A DNA stretch of 63,239 nt, filler included, from Hyphochytrium catenoides (lineage: Eukaryota > Protista > Hyphochytriomycota), in the NCBI GenBank assembly GCA_900088475.1. It is 6 parts of 6 records of this genome, joined end to end, with 100 filler letters (N's around TTAATTAATTAA, not from the genome) between each part and the next. Parts side by side here need not be neighbours in the genome. Positions count along the whole stretch, not along the records: positions 1 to 31,225 come from FLMG01001895.1; 5 more parts are not named here. One strand, written 5' to 3'. Of the stretch, positions 12,232-29,420 are shown piece after piece; position 1 is the first letter of the stretch; each line of letters starts with the position of its first letter. Position numbers and translations under genes: made by a program. The notes beneath the pieces are model-generated. The model did no database searches. It worked only from the letters and a program-made list of their open reading frames with translations, and had not been told where the DNA came from.

Positions 12232-14496
12232 ATGAGGGCCGCTCTTTCCCTCTTTGCTTTGATTCTTCTTTACTCTTCAGCTCCCTCGACACCAATCGTC
12301 TCGGCACAACTGACCGTGGACAATTTTCCTAAGGGAAAAGCCAATGGCTTTTATATGACTACTCCCCCACAGGCAGTCCTCACTGGTGATGCCTGCAAGC
12401 AGTATAAAGTTCCCACCGCAGCAGGATGGCAGGAGATTGCTGCCAAGATCAAGTCCTTTCTTGAGCTCAAGGATTTGAAGTCGGGTCCCCAGCAAATTGA
12501 TGCCAGGCGCTTTGCTGCCATCTTCATCCGCGCCGCCTTCCATGACGCAGGCACCAGAGGCCCGAAATCTCTTATCCCGCCGCCCTTGAACGCCACTTCA
12601 TCGCCCACTCCTCAGAGCAGCAGCACCACCCCGGAAACTCGACCTACAGAAGCTGTTCCCACGCCCTCCCCAACTGAACCTGCCACCACCGCGCCACCAA
12701 GTGAGTCCGCGCCAACTCCATCACCAAGTGAGCCTGCCACCACTGCGCCACCAAGTGAGTCCGCCCCAACTCCATCACCAACTGAACCTGCCACCACTGC
12801 GCCACCAAGTGAGTCCGCCCCAACTCCATCACCAAGTGACGTGAGCTCTGGCTCCGGAGAGGCTGAGTCCAGAACAGCACAAGGACACGCTCTAAGTTTG
12901 GGGACTCGATCGGTTAACATATCTCCAGCCTCCGAAGAAATTCTGCAAGTTGACGGATCTTCCGCCCCTTCTCCGACTCCAGCTTCTTCAGCAGAGACGG
13001 CGCCAGCTACCTCCTCTCCAACGCCCGCAGCCGCCGAAGTCGAGCCCTTGGCCACTCCTCTTCCAACTCCAGCAGCTACACCTGGTGAGACGGCACCTGA
13101 TACCTCCTCTCCAACGCCAGCAGCTACTCCTGCGGAGACGGCACCTGATACCTCCTCTCCAACGCCAGCAGCTACTCCGGCGGAGACGGCACCTGATACC
13201 TCCTCTCCAACGCCAGCAGCTACTCCGGCGGAGACGGCGCCTGATACCTCCTCTCCAACGCCAGCAGCTACTCCGGCGGAGACGGCGCCTGATGCCTCCT
13301 CTCCAACGCCAGCAGGTGCAGAAGAGGAGCCCTTGGTAGCCCCTTCTCCAACACCAGCAGCTACCCTAGAGGAGACCGCTTCCGAAACCATCATCACTTC
13401 AGAATCTCAGTCTGGCGCTGCAGGTCTTACTCTTTCTTCCTCTGCCAATAACGGTGTCGACCAGGAGCTAGGGTCCGTCAGTGGAGACGCCCCGATCAGT
13501 GTCGAGGAAGGCCAGAGCACAATCACGACCCGAAGGGCACTGAGGTCGGAAAGAAGACTTGGAGTCCGAGCTCTTCAGTCACAAGCGTCTGACCCTACAC
13601 CTGTCCCCTCGCTCTCTGCTACCACGACGACCTCTAGTCCTACGCCTGTTCCACTAAGCACTGCCTCACAACCTACCCCGGCTTCCCTTGGAAGTGCATC
13701 CAATCCTACGCCAGCGCCTACACCATCTACCTTGTCGAGCGCGACCGCCCTGGTAGGGGGAGCAGACGGCTCTCTAGTGTTCTCTCCAGAGGAAGCAGCC
13801 TTCCTCGGCAATGAAATGCCGTTTCCCTTCGTTCCTTACGTTCGCGGGGCTTTGATCGACATCGTGGAGGAGTTTGGCATCTCCTGGGCGGATGCTATTG
13901 CAGTCGCAGGCGCAGTGGCGTCGAACTTCTTCAACAAAGACAATCCTAAGAGTTTCCAACTCGATGTCGGCCGTTGCGATAACCCTGCCACCAATCCTGC
14001 CTTTGCTCTCCCCTTACCATGGTCTTCCCTTACCGAGCTTATAGGCTACTTCAGGAGCGTGGGACTCGGCATACGTGAGGGCGCTGCCTTGTTGGGCTCC
14101 CACGTCCTGATGAAGGACAATGGCAGAGCTGGACCGGACAACTTCAGGACGGCTCCCGAAGGAGAAGCTGGTCCTCAGATGTACAAATGGACGAACAAGT
14201 ACTATACGGACGGGATGGCGGGCACCATGACGCTCTCCGGCCAGTTTTTGGAGACGAAGGTGGAATGGACGGCGTCGGACAAGTGGCATTACACGCCCAA
14301 CGATGCGTTGGTCTCTTACGCCATGACGAGGAAGACGCCTGAACCGGATGCCCAGAATTGGGCGGTGTCGATGAGGTTCTTCGCGATGGATCCTCAGGGT
14401 TGGATCAACGTTTACTTCAACGCCTATCGCAGGATGACCAACATTGGCGCGCGCTATCTGCCAGGAAAGCGGACGCTTATCTCGATATCAGCATAA
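12232..14496 (+). CDS. Secreted non-animal heme peroxidase (peroxidase-catalase superfamily) with an internal Pro/Ser/Thr-rich mucin-like insertion
   Basis: Single 754-aa ORF with a hydrophobic signal peptide (MRAALSLFALILLYSSA). Motifs in order: distal FIRAAFHDAGT, GGADGS, GISWADAIAVAGAVA, VGRCD, proximal His in ALLGSHVL, WTNKYY, TPNDAL, AYRRMTNIG. Confidence 0.88.
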   Translation: MRAALSLFALILLYSSAPSTPIVSAQLTVDNFPKGKANGFYMTTPPQAVLTGDACKQYKVPTAAGWQEIAAKIKSFLELKDLKSGPQQIDARRFAAIFIRAAFHDAGTRGPKSLIPPPLNATSSPTPQSSSTTPETRPTEAVPTPSPTEPATTAPPSESAPTPSPSEPATTAPPSESAPTPSPTEPATTAPPSESAPTPSPSDVSSGSGEAESRTAQGHALSLGTRSVNISPASEEILQVDGSSAPSPTPASSAETAPATSSPTPAAAEVEPLATPLPTPAATPGETAPDTSSPTPAATPAETAPDTSSPTPAATPAETAPDTSSPTPAATPAETAPDTSSPTPAATPAETAPDASSPTPAGAEEEPLVAPSPTPAATLEETASETIITSESQSGAAGLTLSSSANNGVDQELGSVSGDAPISVEEGQSTITTRRALRSERRLGVRALQSQASDPTPVPSLSATTTTSSPTPVPLSTASQPTPASLGSASNPTPAPTPSTLSSATALVGGADGSLVFSPEEAAFLGNEMPFPFVPYVRGALIDIVEEFGISWADAIAVAGAVASNFFNKDNPKSFQLDVGRCDNPATNPAFALPLPWSSLTELIGYFRSVGLGIREGAALLGSHVLMKDNGRAGPDNFRTAPEGEAGPQMYKWTNKYYTDGMAGTMTLSGQFLETKVEWTASDKWHYTPNDALVSYAMTRKTPEPDAQNWAVSMRFFAMDPQGWINVYFNAYRRMTNIGARYLPGKRTLISISA
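12655..12838 (+). repeat. Coding tandem repeat, 54-nt (18-aa) unit PTPSP(T/S)EPATTAPPSESA, ~3.3 copies
   Basis: Repeated actgaacctgccaccactgcgccaccaagtgagtccgcccc units, in frame. Confidence 0.9.
13060..13316 (+). repeat. Coding tandem repeat, 48-nt (16-aa) unit TPAETAPDTSSPTPAA, ~5 copies
   Basis: Repeated gagacggcacctgatacctcctctccaacgccagcagctactcc units, in frame. Confidence 0.9.
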
Positions 14497-15348: not shown

Positions 15349-15936
15349 TCAATGGAACTCATTAGCGCTGGTCCATGCTTCCTTCGCGCGATCTTCCTTA
15401 TCATAGTAGTCAAAGAGATTGTCCGCATCCAGCGCCGGCATATCTAGAGAGAGAGAGAGAGAAAGAGAGCGGACAACCTTTAGTCAACGCGCTAGATGAG
15501 AAAGAAGAAAGTAGAAAAAGACCCAGCGCCTGCATATCTAGAGAGTGGAGATGGGGGACGTCAACAGAGGAGAGAGAAAGTAGAAAAAGAGGGCAAGCCG
15601 ACCCCACAATCGAGGACGGAAAATGTTCGCAGAGTCGACTGCAGACGATTGAGTGAGACCAGAAATAGAGCTAGAGAGAGAGAGAGAGATCGGCACAGGC
15701 TCATATGGAGTAGTTCTAATGTTTGAAGAGAGAGATTAACAGACGCGACCAGATCTAGATAGTGAGACAGAGAAAAGAAAGAAAGAAAGAGAAAATCCTT
15801 TTCTTACCCTTGCTCCTCTGTGCTGCAATGGATTCTACGAAGAGCTTGACGAGACTGATGTTGGTCAGAAGAGGAATGTTGAAGTCCGCGGCAGCACGAC
15901 GGATGAGATAGTTGTTCTCCAACTGCTGGCTCTCCT

Positions 15937-15986
<50 letters not shown>

Positions 15987-16142
15987 GGTGAAGAAGAGAA
16001 GGGTGAGATTATTGGCCCTAAGTAAAACATAGGAAGAGCAATAGATAGGAACCGCAGAAAAAAGAACATGGCTCTGGAGCCTCACAGTGTAAAAGGGAAA
16101 GGGAGGGCAGAGAGTGGACGAGGGGAGACAGAGCGGCTTCTT

Positions 16143-16188
<46 letters not shown>

Positions 16189-16733
16189 GCCGTCCCACCT
16201 GGTTAGGGAGGTTAATGACGAGTTCAATCTTCTTTTCCTGAATCAATGACACCGCATTTGGCGCTCCTCCGTCCTCTCCCTTCTCCGCATCGAGAGGGAA
16301 AGAGACGAGCGTGGAAGGCACGTCATACTGAGAGAGAAACTCATGTGTCTTCTTCGTGGCATAGAGAGAGTATCCCAGCTCCACCAGCTTGTGAGCTGCG
16401 TGTACGAAGTCAGCAGAGAATTTCTCCTGCATGGAGAGAAGAATGTTCTGCTTCGGGATGCGGAAGTTGGCAGAAAGCATGGCTTTGAGAAAGGCTTCGT
16501 GCTTGTCCTATTGGCGAGGCGAGGGAGAGAGAAAGAGAGAGAGAAAGAGGAAGAAAGAAAGGTTAGCATAGAAGTAGCAAGGTGAAGTGAGCCTTACAAA
16601 TTGCAAAGACAGCAGAATAAAGTGCAGTGGGGAGCAGACGATAGGAGAGGCAAGCCCAGGAGCGAAAAGTAGGAAAGAAGGTAAAAATATGAAGGGAAAC
16701 CAAAAACGGGAAAGAGACCTTTCAAATAAAAGG

Positions 16734-16777
<44 letters not shown>

Positions 16778-19700
16778 GCCGTAGAGATTGATCCACCTTT
16801 CCAAAGCATGCGACCTCTCCCGTACTGGCCATCTCCACGCCCAGCATCGGGTCCGCTCCTCGCAGTCTCATATAAGAAAACATCGGGGCTTTCACGCCTA
16901 CATAATTGACAGGCCGACGAGAAGAAGAGAGAGATGGGAGATTGTCTCTCCCTGTGTCTTCTCCTACCATCGCCTTGGTTGCCGCCTCTATAAAGTCAGC
17001 ACCCACGGTCTTGGAGACGAAAGGAAAGGACCGAGAGGCGCGAAGGTTTGTCTCGATAATGAGAACATCCGCGCCTTTCGCGAGGAACTGAGCGTTGAAA
17101 GGGCCCGTGATGTTCAGCGCTTTCGCTACCTTCGCGGCTGGGGAAGGGGGAAGAGAAAGAGAGAGGACAAAAGTGAGGAATTCCGCAAAGTGTTGGCCGG
17201 AGCTGCTCTTTTGTTTTCTCTTTTCCTCCCAGACTCTCTCTCCCATCTTCGCCTTCGTCTAAGAAGATATACTGGCCCACTATGGAAAACTTTGAGCACA
17301 AGCAAAGCTCTTTGTCTCTCACTCTCTCTCTTGTTCTCTCCTCTTACCAGCCTTCTTGATATGGTGTTCATAGTAAGAAGACGTGTCCTGCACAGGGAGA
17401 ACGAGCGTGGCGTCTCCTGAGTGGACGCCTGCATTCTCTACGTGCTCGCTGATGGCATGAGCAATGATCTCTCCGTTCAGTGCCACGGCGTCCAGCTCAA
17501 TCTCTCGCGCACCGTCAATGAACTTGGAGATAACCACGGGATGGTCGCCTGACACCTAGTAGGAAAAAAGAAAGAGAGAAAGAGAGAGAAAGCGTAGGGA
17601 AAGAGAGCAAAGAAAAGATGTCCGTGAGAAGGCCAAGATAATGGATGCCGAAGACAGTAGAATGTCGAGGAGGTCAAGATCGTGCTCAATAATGAGAGCC
17701 TCTTTGCTCAGGACGAGTAGAAAGGAGAACGGAGATAATGGGAAAGAGCCAAAAGACATAGAGAGCACGAAGATGTGGAACTTGTCGTCTTACCTCTCCA
17801 GCCTCAACCAAGAAAGAGGCAAGCTTTTCCTTGTCATAGACCACGTTCATCGCCGCGCCACTGAGGACATACGACGGCCTCACAAGGACAGGGAAGCCCA
17901 CAGAAGAGGCAAACTCTTCTGCCTCTTTCAGGCTTGTCAGCTCCCTCCACGCGGGCTGCTTGACCCCGATCTGGTCCATTAACTTAGAGAACTTTTGACG
18001 GTCTTCCGCCGTGTCAATGGACGTGGGAGACGTGCCCAGAATCCTCACGCCTGCGCGATGAAGAGGCAGAGCCAGGTTGTTTGGAATCTGACCGCCCACC
18101 GAGACGACGACGCCCTTGACGCCTTCTCTGTCGTAGATGTCCAGGACGCGCTCGCGTGAGAGTTCTTCGAAATAAAGCTGGTCACATTCATCATAGTCCG
18201 TGCTGACCGTCTCGGGGTTATAGTTGGCCATGACAGTCCTGAATCCTAGCTTCCTAAGCGTTCGGATGCAAGATACGGCGCACCAGTCAAACTCCACGGA
18301 GGAGCCGATGCGATAGGCGCCAGAGCCGAGGACCATCACGCCGTTCTCTTCTCCTTCCATCGTAGGGACGTCATCCTCGCTAGAGAGAGAGAGACAGAGA
18401 GAGAGAGAAGAGAGAAAGTGAGAGAGAGAGAAAGATTAGTGCTAGAGTCAGTGACAGATGGTATCGGAAGAGAACTAGTGCAGGAAGGAAGGAGAGCCTT
18501 GAAGACCCACTTTGAGGAGAAGAGACAGAAACTAAGAGAGAAGAGAGGGAAATAGAGGCGGAAGAATAGAGGGGGGAAGAGGTAGGGAGACAAGAGAGAA
18601 GTAACAGAAAGAGAAGGACGAGAGAGAGAGAGAAAAGAAAGAGAGAGACTGACCTTCCGTGGTACGTGGCATACAGATAGTTCGTCTGTGCAGGATACTC
18701 GGCGGCCAGAGTGTCGATCTGCTTGACCTTAGGGAAGAGGCCAAGACTTTTTCTCTTCTCTCGCACATCGTCCTCTCCCACACCCAGTCTCTCCGCGATC
18801 TGGAGGTCAGAGAAGCCGAGCTGCTTGGCCCTTAGAAGGATCTCAGGGGAGAGACTAGAGAGAGAATAGTTGGCAAGGTTCACGTCAAAGTCCGCGATAG
18901 CCTGTGCAATTCCACGGAGAGAGAGAGAGAGATGGATTAGGCTGACGAAAACGTCACCAATCTAGGGTTATGCTACAGAAGACATGACGAGAGAAGATAG
19001 GAAGGAGAAATGCTAGCGGAGAACAGACACCAGGGACCCTGGACCTCAGAGGGGAAGGAATACACATAGGTTGTGTGAGAGAGAGGAGAGAGAAAGAGAG
19101 AGGAGAGAGAGGCAGATTCGTGATCGCAAAAAGAGAAGAAATGGCGATTGGTCCTACAAAGAAAGGCAATAATCAAGGGAAGAGATAGTGAGGAAGAGAG
19201 AGACTCTGACAAGAAGAAGGGACCCAGGAGAGAGAGAGAGAGAGAGAACAAGAGAAAGAGTTTACCTGGAGTCTGTCGAGGAACCAAGTGTCAATCTTCG
19301 TAATGTCGTGCATCTCATCCACGGAGACAGCGCCTGACTTTAGAGCGTGCGCGATCGCATAGATCCGCTTGTCATTCGGGACACGAAGGGAGCGCTCCAG
19401 ACCAGCAGCGTCCTCGCCCCAGAAGCTCCTCTTCCTGAAAAGAGAGAGAGAGAGAAAGAAAGGAGAACGATAGATAAGAGAAGCGAATTGAGCACGTCTT
19501 CCCTCCTGCCACTGACTATCAATCTCTTCTTTCTCCCACTCTCTCTTTCTCTCACTCTCTCTTCCCTCTCGTCCGCTTCTCTTCACTCCACATTCACGCT
19601 TAGGCGCCATTTTAAAAAAATTCTCTTCCTCGTCTTCTCTTTCTCTCTCTCACCTCGGCTCGAAGCCCTTGATGGCTGGGTCCACCATCCTAAGCGCCTT

Positions 19701-22137
19701 CTGCATTACTTCCTCGAAGGTCCTGCCGATGGCCATCACCTCGCCCACACTCTTCATCGCACTGCCAATCTCCGTGCTTGCATTCTCAAACTTGCTGTTA
19801 GAGAGAGAGGGACAGGTGAGAAAGAGGAGAGAGAGACAGATGGGAAAAGGAGAGAGAGAGCGACAGAAGAGAAAGAAGAGAGAGAGAGGGAGGTGACAGA
19901 CCATTCCCAACAGGAAGAACGAACAAGGAAAGGGAAAGAAGAGAGTTCGTGCCGGAGAGAGAGAGAGAGAGAGAAGAAGATGGGGAGAGGACAGAGGGCA
20001 GTCACCTGAGGTCCCATCTTGGGATCTTGGCCACGACATAGTCAAGGGAAGGCTCAAAGCAGGCGGTGGTCACCTTCGTGACAGAGTTACGCAGCTCTGG
20101 CAGCGTCTTTCCCAAGGCAAGCTTGGCAGCCACAAAGGCAAGAGGATAACCTTTAGGAGAGAGAGAGAGAGAGAGAAGACAGGGTTATAAAGGCATCATG
20201 TTGAAAGGAGAACACGAAGGAAAAAAGAGAGACAGAGAGAGAGAGAGAAACCATAGGGGTGCGTCTAGGTAATAAAGAAAGCACCATCGTCAGCGAAACA
20301 GAAACAACTGAGTAAGGCAAGCTAGAGTCGAGAAACACAAAGAAAGAAAGAAAGAGAGAGAGACGGAGAGAGAGAGAAAGGACTGTCCCAAAAGACTGAC
20401 GCTGTCTCCGTAATGCAAAGAGAGATACAAAGAAAATTGATTGAGAGATAAGGAAAGCAAGCGTCAAATGTCCTTGGCTTCTCTCTCTTTCTTCCCCTTT
20501 CGAGCCTCTCCCTCTCTCTTCTTACCTGTCGCCTTGGACGCCAGCGCTGAGGACCTAGAGAGCCTGGCATTGACTTCAATAATGCAATAATCTTCAGAAT
20601 GCGGATCCAGCGCGTACTGGATGTTACACTCTCCGACAATGCCCAGATGCCTGACAACGGACAGCGCAGTCTGTCTGAGCATGTGATACTCTTTGTTGGA
20701 CAGCGTCTGCGATGGCGCAATGACAATGGAGTCGCCTGTGTGCACGCCCAGCGGGTCAAAGTTCTCCATGTTGCAGACAGTGATGCAGTTATTCTGCGCA
20801 TCCCGGACAACCTCGTACTCGACCTCTTTCCAGCCTTTCAAGCTCTTCTCAACCAGAATCTGCGGAGAGACTGCGAAGGCCTTCTTTGCCATAGAGATGA
20901 GGTGCTCGCGGTCTTCGCAGATACCAGAGCCTAGGCCTCCGAGGGCAAAGGCAGAGCGTATCATGCAGGGATAACCGATTTTGTCGGCGGCATCGAGCGC
21001 GTCTTCTAAGGTGTTGACAGCGATGGAAGGCGCCAGTTTCTCGTTGATTTCCATGAGTTTCTGTGCGAAGATGTCGCGATCTTCTGTGGCTTCCACGACG
21101 GAGATTGGGGTACCAAGGACCTGGGGGAAAGGGCGAGAGTGGAAAGGAGAGAAAGCAAAACATTAGAGAGAGAGACACACACACAGAAAGGGAGAGAGAG
21201 AGTAATCGGCGTAAGCACATAGGATAGGAGAAGGGGAGAGAGGGAGAGGATATTGTGACAGACAGAGGGATGGAAAGACATCAAAAAGAAGGAAGAAGGA
21301 GATAGGGACAGAAAGAGAGAGAAACGGAGCGGAAGGGAAAGTCCATCCACCGACCTGAACTCCATATTTCTCAAAGACTCCTGAGTGCTCCAACTCCACG
21401 CCACAGTTCAGCGCTGTCTGGCCGCCCATGGAGATGACAATGCCATCCGGACGCTCTCTTGCAATAACGTGCTGAAGAAAAGAGAAGGTACGGTGGCGAA
21501 AGAGAGAGTATTACATTGACTGAGCGACTAGTTGTTGCAAGGTGAGGGGGTAAATCATACATAAGGGAGAGAAGAACAAGCTAGAGCAAGAGAGAGAGAG
21601 ACGACAAGAAAACATTTAAGAGTGAGAATCCAGAAAAAGAGAAAGACGAGAAGAAAGAGGCATTCGAAATTGAGGAAAGAGAGAGAGAAAGAGAGAGAGA
21701 AGAGAGAGAGGGAAGAGAGAGAGAACATAGCGGAAGCTGTCCTACCTCGACAAACTCCTTGTTAACCGGTAAATAGTAGACATTATCCGCCTGAGCCGGA
21801 CTACCTTTCTCTACATTCGTCTGCACCGACGCTATATTCGGGTTGATCAGCACCACCTCCAGGCCTTCCTCCTTCAGCGCCTTGATGGCCTGCGAGCCAG
21901 AGTAGTCGAACTCTCCTGCTTGGCCGATAGACAGACCACCAGAGCCAAGAACAAGGACTTTGGAGACTTTGGGCTTGTTAAATTCGGTCCTTTTGAAGCT
22001 GCTAATCGCGGTTTTCTGTTTCTTTTTGGCGGCATCCACGAAAATATCGAAGAGAAATTCGGTATCCGTGGGCCCTCCCATGTGCTCTGGGTGGAACTGC
22101 GCAGTGAAGAAAGGCTTGGACTTATGGATGATTCCTA

Positions 22138-22212
<75 letters not shown>

Positions 22213-23170
22213 AGGCATGTGAGAGAGGAGAAGGAAGAATAGATCAGAGGGATAAAGAAAGTAGAGGAGAGAGCAGGAAAATATGCATATCAGGACTCCC
22301 TACCCAAAAAATAGGAGAGACGGACAACGGAACGACAGACAGAACAGTGAGAGAGAGAGACATAGAAGAGAAAGAGGACTCCCACTAAGAGAGAGTAAAC
22401 ACAATCAACAAAGATCAACACTTTCTTTACTAGCTCCTTGTCTCTCCCGGCTTCTAAACCCCAAGCCACCTCTTCTTCTCCGCCGTGTCTCTCTCTCTCT
22501 CTGTCCGTCTCTCTCGTCTGTTCTCTCTCTCTCTCTCTCATGAATTTCTGTGGCCTATCTCTTACCTTCATTAGTAAAGTCATTGCCATTGACAAAAAGC
22601 TCTTGCCAGTCTTCCGGCAGCTTCTTCCCATCGAGTGCATAGCCATGGTTCTGGCTGGTAATATAGCACTGATCTGTTAGAACATTAACCACCGGCTGAT
22701 TGTGACCGCGATTGCCAAACTTGAGCTTGTACGTGTCCGCGCCGACGGCTCGTCCAATCAGTTGATTGCCCAGGCAGATACCGAAGACAGGCTTTAGCTT
22801 GTCTCCCTCTGCGGCGAGGACTCTCTTGATGTTATCTACGGTCTCAGAGCAGAGCGCAGGGTCGCCTGGGCCGTTAGAGATGAAGACGCCATCGTACCAG
22901 CCAACGTCCTGGATGATGGGATAGTTCCAAGGGACGACTTTGACCTGATAGAGGAAAAAAGAGAGAGATTAGCGAGTTAGTCAGGCGTGCAGAGAGAGAA
23001 GAAGGTTAGAGATGAGCGCTAGAGTGGAACAAGAAAGAGGATAACTGGAAAGAGATCTGCAGCGGCAGAGAGAAAAGGATTAAATAATGCGCGGGAATGC
23101 TTACCCGCTATTAGAATCGTAACAGACAGAGGCAGAACCAAGAGAGAAAGAGAGAGGAGAAACAGATGAA

Positions 23171-23205
<35 letters not shown>

Positions 23206-23986
23206 CGGTACCTCAGCTCCCCTGTCAACCAGGCCTCTGATCATGTTATACTTCATCCCGCAATCCACAGCCAAGATCTTCACAGGGTTGCCCTTTCCAT
23301 AAAACTTCACTTCCTTCGTGGACACTTCCTCGACCAAATGGCGCTTGTTCGGGTCCGAAAGAGAAGGAGTCTCTCCGTCTTCCACGAGGATACGGCCCAA
23401 CATCGCGCCTCTGTCTCGAATTTTCTTCGTGATAAGCCGTGTGTCAATGCCTGAGATGCCAGGAACGCCTTCATGCTGAAGCCATTCCGAGAGAGACATC
23501 TTGGCATTCCAGTGACTATAGTGGGCGGAATAGTCTGAGACACAAAGAGAGAGAGAGACTCTGGTTAGAATGGTGCACGATGAGTCAATAGGATGAAGGC
23601 GTGTGGTTGAAAGGAGATGGAAGATGAGGAATCACACCTCATAGCACAACTTTCTCTCTCTCTCTCTTCCTCCAATCGGCCACATAAGGTTCTGTCTCTT
23701 TCTATCATTCTCTCGCGCTAGAAAAGACGCTCTTTCTGGCCCCTACTCTCCTCACTCTTCTCTCTCTCTCTCTCTCTCTTACCCTGGCAGATGACTCCAG
23801 CCGCATGGATACGATTGGACTCCAGGTACTTGTTCAGTCCATACGCGTCCTTGGCATGAATGTCCGGCACGCCATAGTTCCCAATCATAGGGAAAGTGAG
23901 GTTTAGGATCTGCCCTTGGAATGACGGATCTGTCAAACTTTCAGGATAGCCAACCATAGCGGTCGTGAAGACAACCTACAGAGAGG

Positions 23987-24032
<46 letters not shown>

Positions 24033-24515
24033 AAGAGAGGAGGGAAAGGATGCAGATATGGGAAGAGAAGGGATAAACCGGAGAAATAGAGGAAATAGAG
24101 TTAGTTCGCCTTTTTATCTCTTCCCGACCACTCTTGATATCTCTCTCTCTCGCTCTCTTCCGCCGTAATCCTCTTTATCTAAGCAAGGAAAGATACTCAT
24201 TGCAGGAGATCGAAGGACAGGAAAGAGTAAAAGGGAAGAAGCTATGATTGGCTATTCTCGCTGATCTCTCTCTCTGTGTCAGTTCCCGCCCCACATAGAA
24301 AATCTTTCTCTCACCTCGCCAGAGGTTGATCTGTCCGCGCCAAAGGAAAGTCCTTCCAGCTTCGTGCCATCCTCAAGCTCCAGAACAGCCCTCTTGGTGA
24401 ACTTTGGAGCCTTCGTACGGTCAACGAAAGTGGAAAAGAGATTCTGGCACACGGCCGTTGGGGACTTTGGACGCCCCAGAGAGGACGGGGAGACGATCTT
24501 TCGAAGCTTCAACAT
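15349..24515 (-). CDS. CPS1: Fused carbamoyl-phosphate synthetase (glutaminase + synthetase + MGS-like domain), urea-cycle/arginine type (CPS I/III-like), with a probable mitochondrial presequence; ~17 exons
   Basis: Start [19 protein letters not shown] (basic, Ser-rich presequence). Small-subunit motifs: [52 protein letters not shown]. Large-subunit motifs: [117 protein letters not shown]. Allosteric domain [15 protein letters not shown]. Last exon 15349-15443 ends [10 protein letters not shown]. Introns are GT-AG. No DHOase or ATCase follows, so this is not CAD. Confidence 0.95.
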
Positions 24516-24641
24516 CTCTAACAATATCGAATATTGGTGGAGTGTTTTGCAATACAATAAACTCTGTCTGCAGAAATCTGGAAATCCGCCAAAATATATA
24601 TGAAGATTTCCTCAGATCACCAGATGAAGATTATTGCGTCT

Positions 24642-24761
24642 TCACAAGATGGTCCAGGCGAGGGTGTCGAAGTAGTCGTGCGAGACTCTGAGAAAGTATC
24701 GACCGTCACTCTTCGACCGGTAGATAGCTGGCTGAAAAATCGAGACAGACTCGAAGATCAT
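24642..24761 (-). promoter_or_regulatory. Candidate regulatory uORF (39 aa) in the CPS leader, arginine-attenuator-peptide-like
   Basis: ATG at 24761 gives MIFESVSIFQPAIYRSKSDGRYFLRVSHDYFDTLAWTIL*. The stop lies 126 nt before the CPS ATG at 24515, and there is no other ATG between 24761 and 24515. Confidence 0.5.
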
Positions 24762-25277
24762 CCAGCTCAGAAGAGAAGAAAGAGTGCAAGAGAGAGCTTT
24801 TCCGTGCACCAGACCTCTTGTCCTGCTCTTTCCCCTGCTGTTCAAGGGAAGGCCGAAGAGAGAGAGGCCACAAAAGATGAAAGGATCCGTCTACTCACAA
24901 ATAGCACACGCAACGCACCCAGAGACAGATCCGGACGCAAAGAGAGAGAGAGATCCGCGAGGGGAGAGAGAGAGAGATCTCTAGATCTTACTCGGTCTAG
25001 TCGAGTCCAGGAGTGACGCAGCTCGCTCCTCCACTGGGATGAAATGGAAAGTGAAGCAGAAGAGGAAAAGACCCGCCTTGCAGGAGTTGCCTGCTTCTGA
25101 TTCTTCTGATGAAGTGCTCTCTCTCTCTCTCTCTCTCTCTCTCGCTCCTCATACACACAAACAGGTCAACATTAATTCTTGGTGGGAGAGTGAGAGAGAG
25201 AGAGAGTGAGAGAGGGAGTGAGAGAGAGAGAGAGAAAGAGAGAGCGGGGAGAGAGAGAGAGAGAGGAAGAGAGGGAG

Positions 25278-25330
<53 letters not shown>

Positions 25331-26513
25331 CACGTGTCTGCCTCTACGTTACGGTAGCCCTGTAGATCGCTCCTCTGTCTCTTCATGAAAGGAAATCTCC
25401 GAAGCAGAGCCTCTCTCTCTCTGTCTCTCTTTCATCACTCTTCCTCGTAGTATTCCCATCTCGTCTCAGAATCTCCTGAGTTTGTATGTAGTTAATATGG
25501 TCTCTGTCTTTCCTTTTCCATATCTCACTTCCCCCTCTGTCTCTTCTTGAAGAACAGTGGGGTATTTTGTTCTGACTCTTTTACCTTCCTAACTGTGTCT
25601 CTTCATACTCTGTCTCGCTCCTCCTCTCCTTCCTGTCTAATTCTTCCTAATCAAAAACAGTAGCGCTGGTACAATTCTCATGTCACCTGACCTTAAGGGT
25701 TGTGAGTGTGATGATTACGCTGGTTGATTTAGTGGGTTTGATAGAGATAATATAGTTCTATTGCAAAGTAGTAACGCTTGTGTTTGGAGTATCCAAGCTG
25801 TGGGTTTGGCAGGGCTTTGTGTTAGCTTATCTGCTGTAATAGTTGAACCTCTGTCTTTCTAAGGGCTGTCCAGAGTATTACTACTCAGGAGTACTATGGT
25901 TAGCACTGGTCTTGTTGATTTTGGTTGTATTACTACTACATAGGGGGCCGACCGCCATTGTCTGACCGCAAGAAAAAGATCGAGGTCAGCTGGGGCAGAA
26001 TGGATGATGTTGCTGTTTGTTAGACAGATACGCGTACGTGTACGTAAGTACTGTTCGAGGCTACACCCTCTAGTAGTTGATTCAGAATAACATTAAACTT
26101 TATTACTGTAAAGGAGGTTATGCCGGTGTTGGCCGGGACACGTATCAAGGATAAATGCCTCAAGTTTAGGGGTGGGCTTGACACACAAAGATTACGGCCA
26201 AAACCGACTCTTTGGCCTTTTATTTGCTAACAAGGGAAGTCCACTCTCCATTACTGTTCTACACGTGAGTAGAACGACCAAGTACTGTATATGCATTCAT
26301 CGTCGCACAACTACTACGCACATCGAGCTCTCTTCATCATATCTGATTCTTTGTGGGTTTGTCGAGAGATAAAAATGAGTCTTTTTATTTACAGGGGACA
26401 GTGAAGACAGAGTGGGTGTTGATTAATCACTGTGTGATAACCAGTAGGATGTGTTAGAAATTCTGGCGGATGGTCTTCCACAGTTCAAGTTTCAGCTTCT
26501 TCACATCTGCATC

Positions 26514-26570
<57 letters not shown>

Positions 26571-26672
26571 TCTTTTCTCTCTCTCTTTTCTCTCTCTTTT
26601 CTCTCTCTCTTTTCTCTCTCTTTTCTCTCTCTCACTCACTCTCTTTCTCTCTCTCTCCGTCTTTCACTCACA

Positions 26673-26704
<32 letters not shown>

Positions 26705-27172
26705 TTGGTTCTCTGTTGTTTCTCTATGAGAGTTGTTGACTCATCACCTGGTCTGACTCTGTTTGCTGTGTCTCCCTTCTGCTCTCTGCTCCGTCTTTTC
26801 TCCATCGCTCGCTGGTCCAGGTGGCGTCTCTCTCTCGCTCTCTCTCTCTCGCTCTCNNNNNNNNNNNNNNNNNNNNNNNNNNNNNNNNNNNNNNNNNNNN
26901 NNNNNNNNNNNNNNNNNNNNNNNNNNNNNNNNNNNNNNNNNNNNNNNNNNCATTCGCTCTTGAGCGCTCTCTCTTCTCCACATGCTCTCTCTCTCAATCA
27001 CTGCTCAAGAAAAACGCTCTTTTTCCGATTTTCCAGAGTCTCAACAGTGGCCTGCGACAGGAATCTGCGCCGCCCCTTTTGGGCAGCCGCCTGATAGACC
27101 TGAGCAAGGATCCGCAGAAGAGGAAAGGGAAAGCACGAGGAGAGCGGGAATAGCCCTCGGTTTGAGCGCTGC

Positions 27173-27206
<34 letters not shown>

Positions 27207-27245
27207 AAAGACGTCGAACTTCTCTTCTGGTAGGTAGAAGGAGCC

Positions 27246-29420
27246 ATGCTGCGTCACTCTCTCCGCGTCCTCTCCTCGAAGAGACAATTCTCCCCGTCTC
27301 TCTTCTCTCCCTCAACTTGCTCTTTGTCTCTCTCTTCTCTTTCCTCTCAACAACACTTCCGTTCTGCTTCTTCTTCTTCTTCCACTGCCGAGCACAAGCG
27401 CGTCATCACACAGCTCTTGCGGTCTTTGGGCTCCAAAGAAGACATCGATGAGTATCTGAAGCACTTCGGCACGCCAGGAGTGAAGCGCACCGCGGTGATC
27501 AAAGTTGGCGGCGAGATCCTCCTCAATGAGCTTGAAGTCTTTGCTAAATCTCTGACATTTCTGAAGCTCGCGGGTCTCTTCCCTGTCGTTATACATGGGG
27601 CGGGCCCTCAGATGAACGATGCGCTCGCGAAGGCCAATGTAGAGCCCACATACCTTGGCGGCATGCGCGTGACGGATGAATCTACTCTGACTGTCGCCAG
27701 AGATGTCTTCCAGAAGGCGAACTTGGTGCTTGTCAAGGCGCTCGAAGACATTGGCACGCCGGCGCGGCCGATCATCACCGGCGTCTTCGAGTCAGAGATG
27801 AAAGACTATCATAAGCTTGGCTTCGTGGGAGAGATTCAGCGCGTCAATGCGCGACAGATCCAGGCGTCCATCGACCAAGGCTACATCCCTATCATCACGT
27901 CTCTGGGAGAGAGTAAGACCGGGCAAGTTCTTAACATTAACGCAGACGTAGCGGCACGAGAGCTGGCCATAGAGCTCCAGCCTCACAAGACGATCTTCAT
28001 CAATGCCAAAGGAGGCTGGATTGACGATGACGGGACCAAGCTTAAGGAGATACGGATGACGAGAGACTTTGAACGAATGGCTAACAGAGACTATACCGGC
28101 CGACAAGGCACGCTATTGAAGCTGAAGGAGATCAAACTTCTTTTAGATCACTTGCCGCGCTCGTCTTCCGTTGCCTTGACCTCTGCGTCACAACTTCATC
28201 GGGAGATTCTGAGTAACAGCAGCAGTGGCACGATCTGTGTGCACGGTGGAGAGCATCATAAAGACTCTCATCTCTGGGTAGAAGGAGAAGAGGAAAGAGA
28301 AGGAGGAGAGAAGAAGATCAAGGTCGGGCTTTTGGGCGCAAGAGGCTTTGTAGGACGTGAGGTCATCCGCTTGATTGGACAGCATCCACACCTTACGCTG
28401 CACTGTGCTAGCTCTCGTGCCCTCGTGGGACAGAAAGTGCTGAATATTGCGCTTGCCGAGCCGGTTAATCCTCATACAGAGGAGCCTGTCTCCAAGCCTG
28501 CCGAGGCCCGTCTTCCCCTTCACATCGATCCGGACCTAGAGTTCACGAACATTGAGGTATCGGACATCGAAGCTTCAAGAATAGCTGCGGATGTGGACGT
28601 GTGGATCCTTGCTCTGCCCAACGGTCTCAGCCATCGGTACGTCGGGCCCATTCGGGAGGCGGCAGCGCGGCTCAGGCGCGGGAAGAAGAGCAGGAGCCCC
28701 GTTCTCATCGACCTTTCGGCAGATTATCGCTTTGATGATGCTGGAGAGTGGACCTATGGCCTTCCAGAGGCTCCTGGGGCAAGAGAGAAGATCCGAGGGA
28801 GCACTCTGATCTCCAACCCAGGCTGTTATGCTTCTGGAGCTCAGTTCGGCCTTCTTCCACTTATCCATAGCTCCAACCCTAAGATCCAGCTCAATCGCTC
28901 TCTCCTGCCACATGTCTTTGGCGTCTCGGGCTATAGTGGCGCGGGAACGGGGCTCTCGGAGAAGAATAACCCTGCCGTTCTCAAGGATAACCTTCTTCCT
29001 TACTCTCTGGTGAATCACCTGCATGAGAGAGAGATCTCTCGCCATCTGGGCACTCCGGTGGCCTTCATGCCGCACGTAGCGCCTTACTTTCAAGGGATTT
29101 CTCTGACGTTATCTGCACAGCTAGTCTCTTCGGCCTCTCCTGAGCTCACCGCAGAGGAGCTGCGTGATCTGTATGCAGAGTTCTATGAGAACGAGCCTCT
29201 TATCAACGTGAAGGAGGGCATTCCTTACGTAAGAGACAACGCAGGGAAGCATCACGTATCTCTTGGCGGCTTTTTCTATGATAATGCGCGGCATCGGGTC
29301 ACTCTGGTTTCCACCATTGACAACCTGCTCAAGGGCGCCGCCACGCAAGCGATCCAAAATATCAACATTGCCCTGGATCTGCCTGAGTACGATGGAATTA
29401 TTAGGAAGCAGAACCAGTAG
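27246..29420 (+). CDS. ARG5,6: Bifunctional N-acetylglutamate kinase / N-acetyl-gamma-glutamyl-phosphate reductase (Arg5,6-like ArgB-ArgC fusion), probable mitochondrial presequence, intronless
   Basis: Presequence MLRHSLRVLSSKRQF. NAGK motifs: EYLKHF, VIKVGG, VIHGAGPQ, GMRVTD, LNINAD, TLLKLKEIK. NAGPR motifs: KVGLLGARGFVG, IDLSADYRFD, SNPGCYA (catalytic Cys), GVSGYSGAG, HLHEREI, DNLLKGAATQA. Confidence 0.96.
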   Translation: MLRHSLRVLSSKRQFSPSLFSPSTCSLSLSSLSSQQHFRSASSSSSTAEHKRVITQLLRSLGSKEDIDEYLKHFGTPGVKRTAVIKVGGEILLNELEVFAKSLTFLKLAGLFPVVIHGAGPQMNDALAKANVEPTYLGGMRVTDESTLTVARDVFQKANLVLVKALEDIGTPARPIITGVFESEMKDYHKLGFVGEIQRVNARQIQASIDQGYIPIITSLGESKTGQVLNINADVAARELAIELQPHKTIFINAKGGWIDDDGTKLKEIRMTRDFERMANRDYTGRQGTLLKLKEIKLLLDHLPRSSSVALTSASQLHREILSNSSSGTICVHGGEHHKDSHLWVEGEEEREGGEKKIKVGLLGARGFVGREVIRLIGQHPHLTLHCASSRALVGQKVLNIALAEPVNPHTEEPVSKPAEARLPLHIDPDLEFTNIEVSDIEASRIAADVDVWILALPNGLSHRYVGPIREAAARLRRGKKSRSPVLIDLSADYRFDDAGEWTYGLPEAPGAREKIRGSTLISNPGCYASGAQFGLLPLIHSSNPKIQLNRSLLPHVFGVSGYSGAGTGLSEKNNPAVLKDNLLPYSLVNHLHEREISRHLGTPVAFMPHVAPYFQGISLTLSAQLVSSASPELTAEELRDLYAEFYENEPLINVKEGIPYVRDNAGKHHVSLGGFFYDNARHRVTLVSTIDNLLKGAATQAIQNINIALDLPEYDGIIRKQNQ

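What the first reader, a model, noticed from the sequence alone, without database searches (positions are those of the whole stretch)
24642..24761. Arginine-attenuator-like uORF in front of a non-fungal, fused urea-cycle-type CPS
Seen: the only ATG in the ~250 nt upstream of the CPS start opens a 39-codon ORF ending ...RVSHDYFDTLAWTIL*, 126 nt before the CPS ATG. Known: fungal arginine-specific CPS small-subunit mRNAs (Neurospora arg-2, yeast CPA1) carry the arginine attenuator peptide (N. crassa MNGRPSVFTSQDYLSDHLWRALNA). It stalls ribosomes in high arginine, and D12 and W19 are critical. An ungapped alignment gives identities at S10, D12, Y13, W19 and L22, with the motif close to the stop codon as in fungi. 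T9, Q11, D16 and H17 are not conserved, although an Asp sits at position 15. Inference: a divergent or convergent metabolite-sensing arrest peptide may control a fused CPS in a protist. The match is short and the transcription start is unknown, so chance cannot be excluded.
Basis: partly seen in the sequence, partly recalled or inferred. Interest (0 to 1): 0.88.

Follow-up and report, generated by a model that had tools for sequence, protein, structure and literature searches.

The report
AAP-like uORF before protist CPS
A 39-codon upstream reading frame before an arginine-pathway carbamoyl-phosphate synthetase gene of an oomycete-like protist weakly resembles the fungal arginine attenuator peptide, but it fails the family test and is absent from eight related genomes, so it is most likely a chance look-alike that only an experiment could rescue.

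Summary
On the minus strand, a 39-codon ORF (24761..24642) is the only ATG in 636 nt upstream of the CPS start at 24515, and it ends 126 nt before that start. The CPS is a fused, glutamine-dependent enzyme with a presequence-like N-terminus. It lies head-to-head with an ARG5,6-type gene, and this pairing is conserved in oomycetes.

The attenuator reading is weak:
- BLASTP against N. crassa AAP gives 7/21 identities, E=0.004 for one comparison (about 1 in 300 random small ORFs).
- The Pfam AAP model (PF08252) scores the real AAP at 56 bits but does not match this peptide.
- Only 4 of 12 core residues are kept, and the S-D-H part is lost.
- None of eight oomycete CPS leaders has such a uORF.
- No RNA data exist, so the transcription start is unknown.

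Some minor signals point the other way. Codon usage is in the top ~1% of noncoding windows, the single SNP between isolates is synonymous, and the leader is poor in ATGs.

Verdict: chance resemblance is most likely (~0.55). A lineage-specific AAP-like arrest peptide remains possible (~0.15) and can be tested in vitro.

The parts
24642..24761 (-). 39-codon upstream ORF including its TGA stop. The ATG has a weak context (T at -3, A at +4).
   Evidence: Translation. Sole upstream ATG within 636 nt. Start context read.
24654..24683 (-). AAP-like core S-H-D-Y-F-D-T-L-A-W (uORF residues 27-36). D29 and W36 align with AAP D12 and W19.
   Evidence: BLASTP alignment, score statistics. The Pfam PF08252 model does not match.
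24660..24660 (-). G>A difference in a second isolate (run X2). It is synonymous in the uORF (Leu34, CTC>CTT).
24516..24641 (-). 126-nt AT-rich spacer (32-38% GC) between the uORF stop and the CPS ATG. It holds a TATATAT run and two AATCTTCAT copies, so it could be the core promoter rather than leader.
   Evidence: Sequence, GC profile. The promoter role is inferred only.
24315..24515 (-). CPS exon 1 (67 codons). It has a presequence-like N-terminus and a GTGAG donor at 24314.
   Evidence: The N-terminus aligns with oomycete CPS N-termini.
15352..24515 (-). Fused GATase-CPS gene with at least 17 coding blocks. It keeps the GATase cysteine (GICLGNQ) and has no DHOase or ATCase part.
   Evidence: Pfam and NCBIfam hits, tblastn against the L001 CPS, motif check.
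27246..29420 (+). ARG5,6-type ORF (acetylglutamate kinase fused to N-acetyl-gamma-glutamyl-phosphate reductase), transcribed divergently from the CPS.
   Evidence: The head-to-head pairing is conserved in L001-L004 and L006-L008.

Best explanation
The ORF is a lineage-specific short reading frame upstream of a mitochondrial-type, glutamine-dependent CPS gene, and its likeness to the fungal arginine attenuator peptide is coincidental. It is not a member of the AAP family. If the transcript starts upstream of 24761, it would act as an ordinary weak-context uORF. Most scanning ribosomes would skip its AUG (T at -3). Those that translate it could resume scanning across the 126-nt spacer. Either way CPS translation would be dampened only mildly, without sensing arginine. 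If the transcript starts in the AT-rich spacer, the ORF is not in the mRNA at all. Shown: the ORF, its context, the level of similarity, the failed family match and the absence from relatives. Inferred: its behaviour in translation and the position of the transcription start.
For: The Pfam AAP model PF08252 scores N. crassa AAP at 56 bits (cut-off 18.5) but gives no match to the uORF at E<=10. A PDB sequence search that includes the AAP chain 2XL1 does not return it for the uORF. Only 4 of the 12 core residues T9-R20 are identical, and Q11, S15, D16, H17, L18 and R20 are replaced. The similarity is at a level seen in about 0.1-0.7% of random small ORFs, and four other ORFs among 703 score within 2 points. 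No AAP-like or D-[YFW]-x4-6-W uORF lies in the CPS leaders of eight oomycete loci with the orthologous gene. Six of the seven leaders checked carry an initiator-like element at -10 to -116, which implies short leaders. The peptide has no homologue in the 5.8-billion-protein word search and no meaningful atlas neighbour.
Against: The context is exactly the one where an arginine sensor would be expected. The two tunnel-contacting residues of AAP, Asp-12 and Trp-19 (PMC3299997, PMC7038982), are both present with the same spacing. Codon usage of the ORF lies in the top ~1% of stop-free 39-codon noncoding windows, and the synonymous component alone in the top ~4%. The cumulative coding score has its minimum at the uATG and rises 9 bits to the stop. 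The only SNP in the ORF between two isolates is synonymous, like all 7 SNPs in the CPS exons. The 636-nt upstream stretch is ATG-poor on the sense strand only.
Confidence: 0.55

Rival explanations
1. The uORF is a real arginine-responsive arrest peptide that works like the fungal AAP. As a nascent chain, D29 and W36 would contact the exit tunnel. High arginine would then stall the ribosome at the uORF stop, block scanning to the CPS AUG and possibly trigger NMD. It would be either convergent or a relic that crown oomycetes lost when their leaders shortened.
For: BLASTP E=0.004 over 21 ungapped residues, with D, Y and W in register. The gene is an arginine-pathway CPS paired with ARG5,6. It is the sole uATG, and its weak context would allow leaky scanning. 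Codon usage is coding-like and the one SNP is synonymous. AAP acts on heterologous plant ribosomes, so the tunnel target is universal (PMC7038982).
Against: The family HMM does not match. Half of the near-invariant fungal core, including S-D-H, is missing. D and W sit two residues closer to the stop than in AAP. The uORF is absent from all eight oomycete orthologous leaders. There is no transcript evidence.
Confidence: 0.15
2. The ORF is translated and under some constraint, but through a mechanism unrelated to AAP. It could be a different regulatory peptide, or a sequence-independent uORF kept for dosage control of CPS.
For: Codon-usage score in the top ~1% of noncoding windows, with its boundaries coinciding with the ATG and the stop. 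The one SNP is synonymous. The leader is depleted of ATGs.
Against: Each signal is weak (P about 0.01-0.25) and was found after the fact. The training set is only 2,244 codons. There is no conservation anywhere.
Confidence: 0.15
3. The ORF belongs to another transcript structure. It could be an exon that starts at the pyrimidine-tract plus AG just upstream of the ATG (about 24766), or it could lie next to a 5'-UTR intron. In either case the uORF as drawn would not exist in the mature mRNA.
For: A CT-rich tract followed by AG lies directly before the ATG, and a GTGAGT lies at about 24893-24888. The coding-like signal begins at that point.
Against: No other coding-like segment exists in the 2.7-kb intergenic region. 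No in-phase good donor lies inside the ORF (my reading of the sequence). CT-rich tracts are common throughout this locus. The putative 128-nt intron is shorter than the 210-430-nt gaps between coding blocks of the CPS gene.
Confidence: 0.05

Closest known systems
Fungal arginine attenuator peptide (N. crassa arg-2 uORF, S. cerevisiae CPA1 uORF; Pfam PF08252 Leader_CPA1; PDB 2XL1)
   Same: A single short uORF with a weak start context in front of an arginine-pathway CPS. Asp and Trp are six residues apart near the C-terminus, matching AAP Asp-12 and Trp-19, which contact the tunnel (PMC3299997).
   Different: It is 39 rather than 24-25 residues long, and only 4/12 core residues are kept. There is no match to the family model. 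D and W lie two residues closer to the stop. The downstream gene is a fused GATase-CPS, not a separate small subunit. The host is not a fungus, and the peptide is not conserved in related genomes.
Conserved-peptide uORFs that stall ribosomes in response to metabolites (plant AdoMetDC S-uORF, mammalian AMD1 MAGDIS, hCMV gp48 uORF2)
   Same: The proposed logic is the same: a nascent uORF peptide senses a pathway product and blocks access to the main ORF (PMC7038982).
   Different: Those uORFs are defined by peptide conservation across species or by experiment. Neither exists here.
Mitochondrial glutamine-dependent fused CPS (CPS III type) of oomycetes
   Same: The domain order is the same, the GATase cysteine is kept, the N-terminus is presequence-like, and identity to oomycete orthologues runs from 57% to 88% across the aligned coding blocks. 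The head-to-head partner ARG5,6 is also shared.
   Different: The window's gene has at least 16 introns, whereas the oomycete orthologues in L001 and L006-L008 are called as single uninterrupted genes. The oomycete leaders carry an initiator-like element that the window lacks.

Membership tests
Fungal AAP (Pfam PF08252 Leader_CPA1) | Matches the curated family profile at or above its gathering score | tested here: not met
   N. crassa AAP scores 56 bits (cut-off 18.5). The uORF and its C-terminal 23 residues give no match at E<=10.
Fungal AAP (Pfam PF08252 Leader_CPA1) | Conserved core T-S/C-Q-D-Y-L/I-S-D-H-L/I-W-R/K (the yeast sequence is from my memory; the N. crassa one is verified by PDB 2XL1) | tested here: not met
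   4/12 residues are identical (S, D, Y, W). Q11, S15, D16, H17, L18 and R20 are replaced.
Fungal AAP (Pfam PF08252 Leader_CPA1) | Asp-12 and Trp-19 equivalents with the same spacing | tested here: met
   D29 and W36 are in ungapped register. Their role is described in PMC3299997 and PMC7038982.
Fungal AAP (Pfam PF08252 Leader_CPA1) | Peptide conserved in orthologous CPS leaders | tested here: not met
   It is absent from eight oomycete loci, L001-L008. No closer relative was found.
Fungal AAP (Pfam PF08252 Leader_CPA1) | Lies in the 5' leader of the mRNA of an arginine-specific CPS | tested here: inconclusive
   The arginine-type CPS context is supported. No RNA run was listed and the transcription start is unknown.
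Fungal AAP (Pfam PF08252 Leader_CPA1) | Arginine-dependent ribosome stalling, abolished by an Asp-to-Asn change | not testable with these tools
   This needs cell-free translation or ribosome profiling.
Conserved-peptide uORF (generic) | Amino-acid conservation across species with purifying selection | tested here: inconclusive
   There is no conservation at long distance. Within the species there is only one SNP, and it is synonymous.
Fused glutamine-dependent CPS of the arginine/urea-cycle type (main ORF) | GATase with catalytic Cys, two ATP-grasp halves, no DHOase/ATCase, presequence-like N-terminus | tested here: met
   Pfam and NCBIfam hits, collinear tblastn to a 1,511-aa orthologue, and the GICLGNQ motif with 8 K/R against 1 D/E in the first 40 residues. 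Mitochondrial import itself is inferred.

The most novel reading that the evidence does not exclude
A stramenopile (oomycete-like) protist controls its mitochondrial fused CPS with a nascent-peptide arginine sensor that uses the same Asp...Trp tunnel contacts as the fungal AAP. This sensor would have arisen independently, or would have been inherited from an ancestor and lost in crown oomycetes. It would be the first AAP-type attenuator outside fungi and the first on a fused CPS.
Probability: 0.15. Interest if true: 0.8.

Novelty: not a real feature. Interest (0 to 1): 0.35.

Why it matters
AAP is the textbook eukaryotic example of a nascent peptide that senses a small molecule inside the ribosome tunnel, and it is known only from fungi. 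A working relative with just a third of the core conserved would show which contacts are truly needed. It would also show that this solution can arise more than once. As the evidence stands, the resemblance is most likely accidental. The practical value of this report is to say that one inexpensive in vitro test would settle the question. It also records that CPS and ARG5,6 form a conserved head-to-head pair in oomycete-type genomes.

Tried and rejected
- **RNA evidence:** no RNA run was listed. Only DNA runs and three tiny unrelated runs were found. Laid reads gave no transcript ends or splice joints.
- **Closer relatives:** the word-index search with the uORF peptide found nothing. An exact-product look-up found nothing. 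A metagenome scan with ARG5,6 found nothing. The representative search with a CPS exon gave only distant clusters.
- **Lineage identification:** the search with the peroxidase-domain ORF gave no hit, and Pfam on flanking ORFs gave none.
- **Rfam on the intergenic region:** only sub-threshold miRNA hits on a (CT)n/(GA)n hairpin.
- **Antisense ORF 24600-25016 (138 aa):** no Pfam family and a negative coding score, so it was rejected as a gene.
- **A second AAP-like uORF before ARG5,6:** the 83-aa ORF contains D-F-x5-W but has no BLASTP similarity to AAP or to the CPS uORF, so it was rejected as support.
- **An alternative first exon giving a presequence-less CPS:** rejected, because no good in-phase donor lies inside the ORF (sequence).
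- **Atlas feature search:** no meaningful neighbour.
- **AAP papers:** the primary papers on AAP sequence requirements (Spevak 2010, Hood 2007, Fang 2004, Wei 2012) are not held. Statements about the fungal consensus beyond N. crassa therefore rest on my memory and on the Pfam model.

Full report
**1. What is there**

The feature lies on the minus strand. An ATG at 24761 opens 39 sense codons that end with ...RVSHDYFDTLAWTIL and a TGA at 24644-24642. The next ATG downstream is at 24515. It opens an exon of 67 codons that ends at a GTGAG donor. This is the only sense-strand ATG in the 636 nt upstream of 24515. Dinucleotide-preserving shuffles expect 6.8, and the antisense strand has 7. Because I set the boundary at the next ATG, the fair significance is nearer 0.02 than the nominal 0.004.

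**2. The gene behind it**

Pfam and NCBIfam place CPS small-chain, pre-ATP-grasp and ATP-grasp domains on minus-strand ORFs from about 23500 down to 16700. A tblastn with a 1,511-residue orthologue (from L001) lays 17 collinear coding blocks from 24425 to 15352, at 57-88% identity.

- The GATase nucleophile motif GICLGNQ is intact.
- The first 40 residues have 8 K/R, 1 D/E and 9 S/T, which looks like a mitochondrial presequence.
- No DHOase or ATCase part follows.

On the other strand, 2.7 kb away, a 724-residue ORF (27246-29420) fuses acetylglutamate kinase to N-acetyl-gamma-glutamyl-phosphate reductase, the ARG5,6 architecture. Its best relatives are oomycete proteins at 52-58% identity.

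The head-to-head CPS/ARG5,6 arrangement recurs in several places:
- four Logan contigs, L001-L004;
- Pythium oligandrum, Phytophthora cinnamomi and Albugo candida;
- Saprolegnia parasitica, where the two genes are close but not divergent.

**3. How good is the match to AAP**

The quoted N. crassa sequence is identical to PDB 2XL1 chain A. BLASTP aligns uORF residues 19-39 with AAP residues 2-22 without gaps. It finds 7/21 identities (G3, R4, S10, D12, Y13, W19, L22), 15.8 bits and E=0.004 for that single comparison.

My simulations agree:
- Identity counts are unremarkable: 4/12 in the core P=0.12, and 5/14 P=0.034.
- The BLOSUM score is reached by 0.1-0.3% of random 39-mers.
- D-Y-x5-W is found in 0.05% of random 39-mers.

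Among 703 natural ATG ORFs of 25-60 codons from the window and eight loci, this one ranks first with score 30, but four others score 28-29. Asp-12 and Trp-19 are the AAP residues reported near the tunnel nucleotides A751 and U2609, and D12N abolishes stalling (PMC3299997, PMC7038982). Both are present here with the same spacing, although two residues closer to the stop.

**4. The formal family test fails**

Pfam holds a model of this family, PF08252 Leader_CPA1. It scores N. crassa AAP at 56 bits against a cut-off of 18.5. It reports nothing for the uORF or for its C-terminal 23 residues, even at E<=10. A sequence search of the PDB, which includes the AAP chain, does not return it for the uORF. 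Of the twelve core residues T9-R20, only four are kept. The S-D-H-L stretch before the tryptophan, which N. crassa and (from my memory) yeast share, reads D-T-L-A here.

**5. Conservation**

I extracted the CPS leaders of eight oomycete loci. I listed every ATG uORF and searched all three frames for D-[YFW]-x4-6-W.

- None has an AAP-like uORF. The only motif hits are unrelated stretches far upstream.
- Six of the seven leaders checked carry an initiator-like element (TCAYTYY followed by CAAC or a close variant in most) at -10 to -116. This implies short leaders with no room for such a uORF.
- In Albugo the whole intergenic space is 350 bp.

The uORF peptide has no relative in the 5.8-billion-protein word search. 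It has no exact gene call on record and no meaningful atlas neighbour. A metagenome scan with ARG5,6 found no closer relative. The caveat is that every available relative is distant and has a compact, intron-less version of the locus.

**6. Is it in the mRNA?**

This is unknown. No RNA run was listed, and the runs that hold the locus are DNA. The laid contigs give no transcript information. The 126-nt spacer is distinctly AT-rich (32-38% GC against about 50% around it). It contains a TATATAT run and two copies of AATCTTCAT. It could be the core promoter, which would leave the ORF outside the transcript, but that is only an inference.

**7. Signals in favour of a real, translated ORF**

I trained a codon log-odds score on 2,244 codons of the CPS blocks and ARG5,6, against local noncoding trinucleotides.

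- The score gives the uORF +0.24 bits per codon. Exons average +0.49 and noncoding windows average -0.33.
- Only 0.9% of stop-free 39-codon noncoding windows reach the uORF's value.
- The synonymous-codon part alone is in the top 4%.
- Along the frame, the cumulative score falls to its minimum exactly at the ATG, rises 9 bits to the stop, and then falls again.

A second isolate (run X2) differs from the window at 7 sites in the CPS exons, all synonymous. It differs at one site in the uORF, also synonymous (CTC to CTT, Leu34). Each of these signals is weak and was found after the fact. They all point the same way, and they keep a functional reading alive.

**8. Weighing the readings**

Under chance, the similarity has a probability of about 0.003, and the independent part of the codon signal about 0.04. 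Under a true AAP-type mechanism one would expect a much better match, because the fungal core is tightly conserved. The observed low score is therefore only mildly more likely under that hypothesis. A different kind of arrest peptide would not predict the resemblance at all. The prior for an AAP-type sensor in a lineage whose sampled relatives all lack it is small.

My estimates are:
- chance resemblance, with at most generic uORF behaviour: about 0.55;
- an AAP-like arginine sensor: about 0.15;
- another kind of translated or constrained uORF: about 0.15;
- a different transcript structure: about 0.05.

**9. Comparison with the known and verdict**

In position and logic, the ORF looks like AAP. 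It is not a member of the AAP family by the tests available: the profile match, the core motif and conservation all fail, and only the Asp/Trp spacing is met. If it did work, it would be a new variant of a known kind and of real interest to the field. On present evidence, the attenuator is most likely not a real feature. Mapping the 5' end and running one cell-free arginine toeprint with the D29N and W36A controls would decide the question.

Noticed in passing
window 15352-29420; L001-L004, L006-L008: The fused CPS and the ARG5,6-type gene sit head-to-head in the window and in seven oomycete loci, with intergenic distances from 350 bp (Albugo) to 3.9 kb (Phytophthora cinnamomi). In Saprolegnia they are neighbours but not divergent. 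One literature search found no description of this pair.
   Followed up: partly
window 26982-27233 (+): An 83-codon ORF lies in the ARG5,6 leader, in frame with ARG5,6, and stops 13 nt before its ATG. It is the only ATG in the 264 nt upstream. It contains S-D-F-P-E-S-Q-Q-W (D-F-x5-W) near its N-terminus. It has no BLASTP similarity to AAP or to the CPS uORF.
   Followed up: yes
window 25112-25223: A (CT)n run, a short loop and a (GA)n run form a long hairpin. It draws many sub-threshold miRNA-family hits in Rfam. These are most likely low-complexity artefacts.
   Followed up: partly
window 26857-26950: A run of N (an assembly gap) lies inside the CPS/ARG5,6 intergenic region, so its true length is uncertain.
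   Followed up: no
window 15352-24515 versus L001, L006-L008: The window's CPS is split into at least 17 coding blocks, with gaps of about 210-430 nt between them. The oomycete orthologues in L001 and L006-L008 are called as single uninterrupted genes of 1,511-1,514 codons. The window's organism is therefore an intron-rich outlier relative to sampled oomycetes.
   Followed up: partly
L001-L004, L006, L008, 10-116 nt upstream of the CPS ATG: Six oomycete CPS leaders carry an initiator-like element TCAYTYY, followed by CAAC or a close variant in most, resembling the oomycete Inr/FPR core promoter as I recall it. The window and Phytophthora cinnamomi lack an exact match.
   Followed up: partly
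window 12232-14496 (+): A 754-codon ORF has a peroxidase domain only in its C-terminal third. It has no homologue at E<=1e-5 in the word-index protein search.
   Followed up: partly
window 22500-27500, run X2: A second DNA sample of the same species label differs by scattered SNPs. All 7 in CPS exons are synonymous third-position changes, and one in ARG5,6 changes Phe15 to Leu in the presequence-like region.
   Followed up: yes
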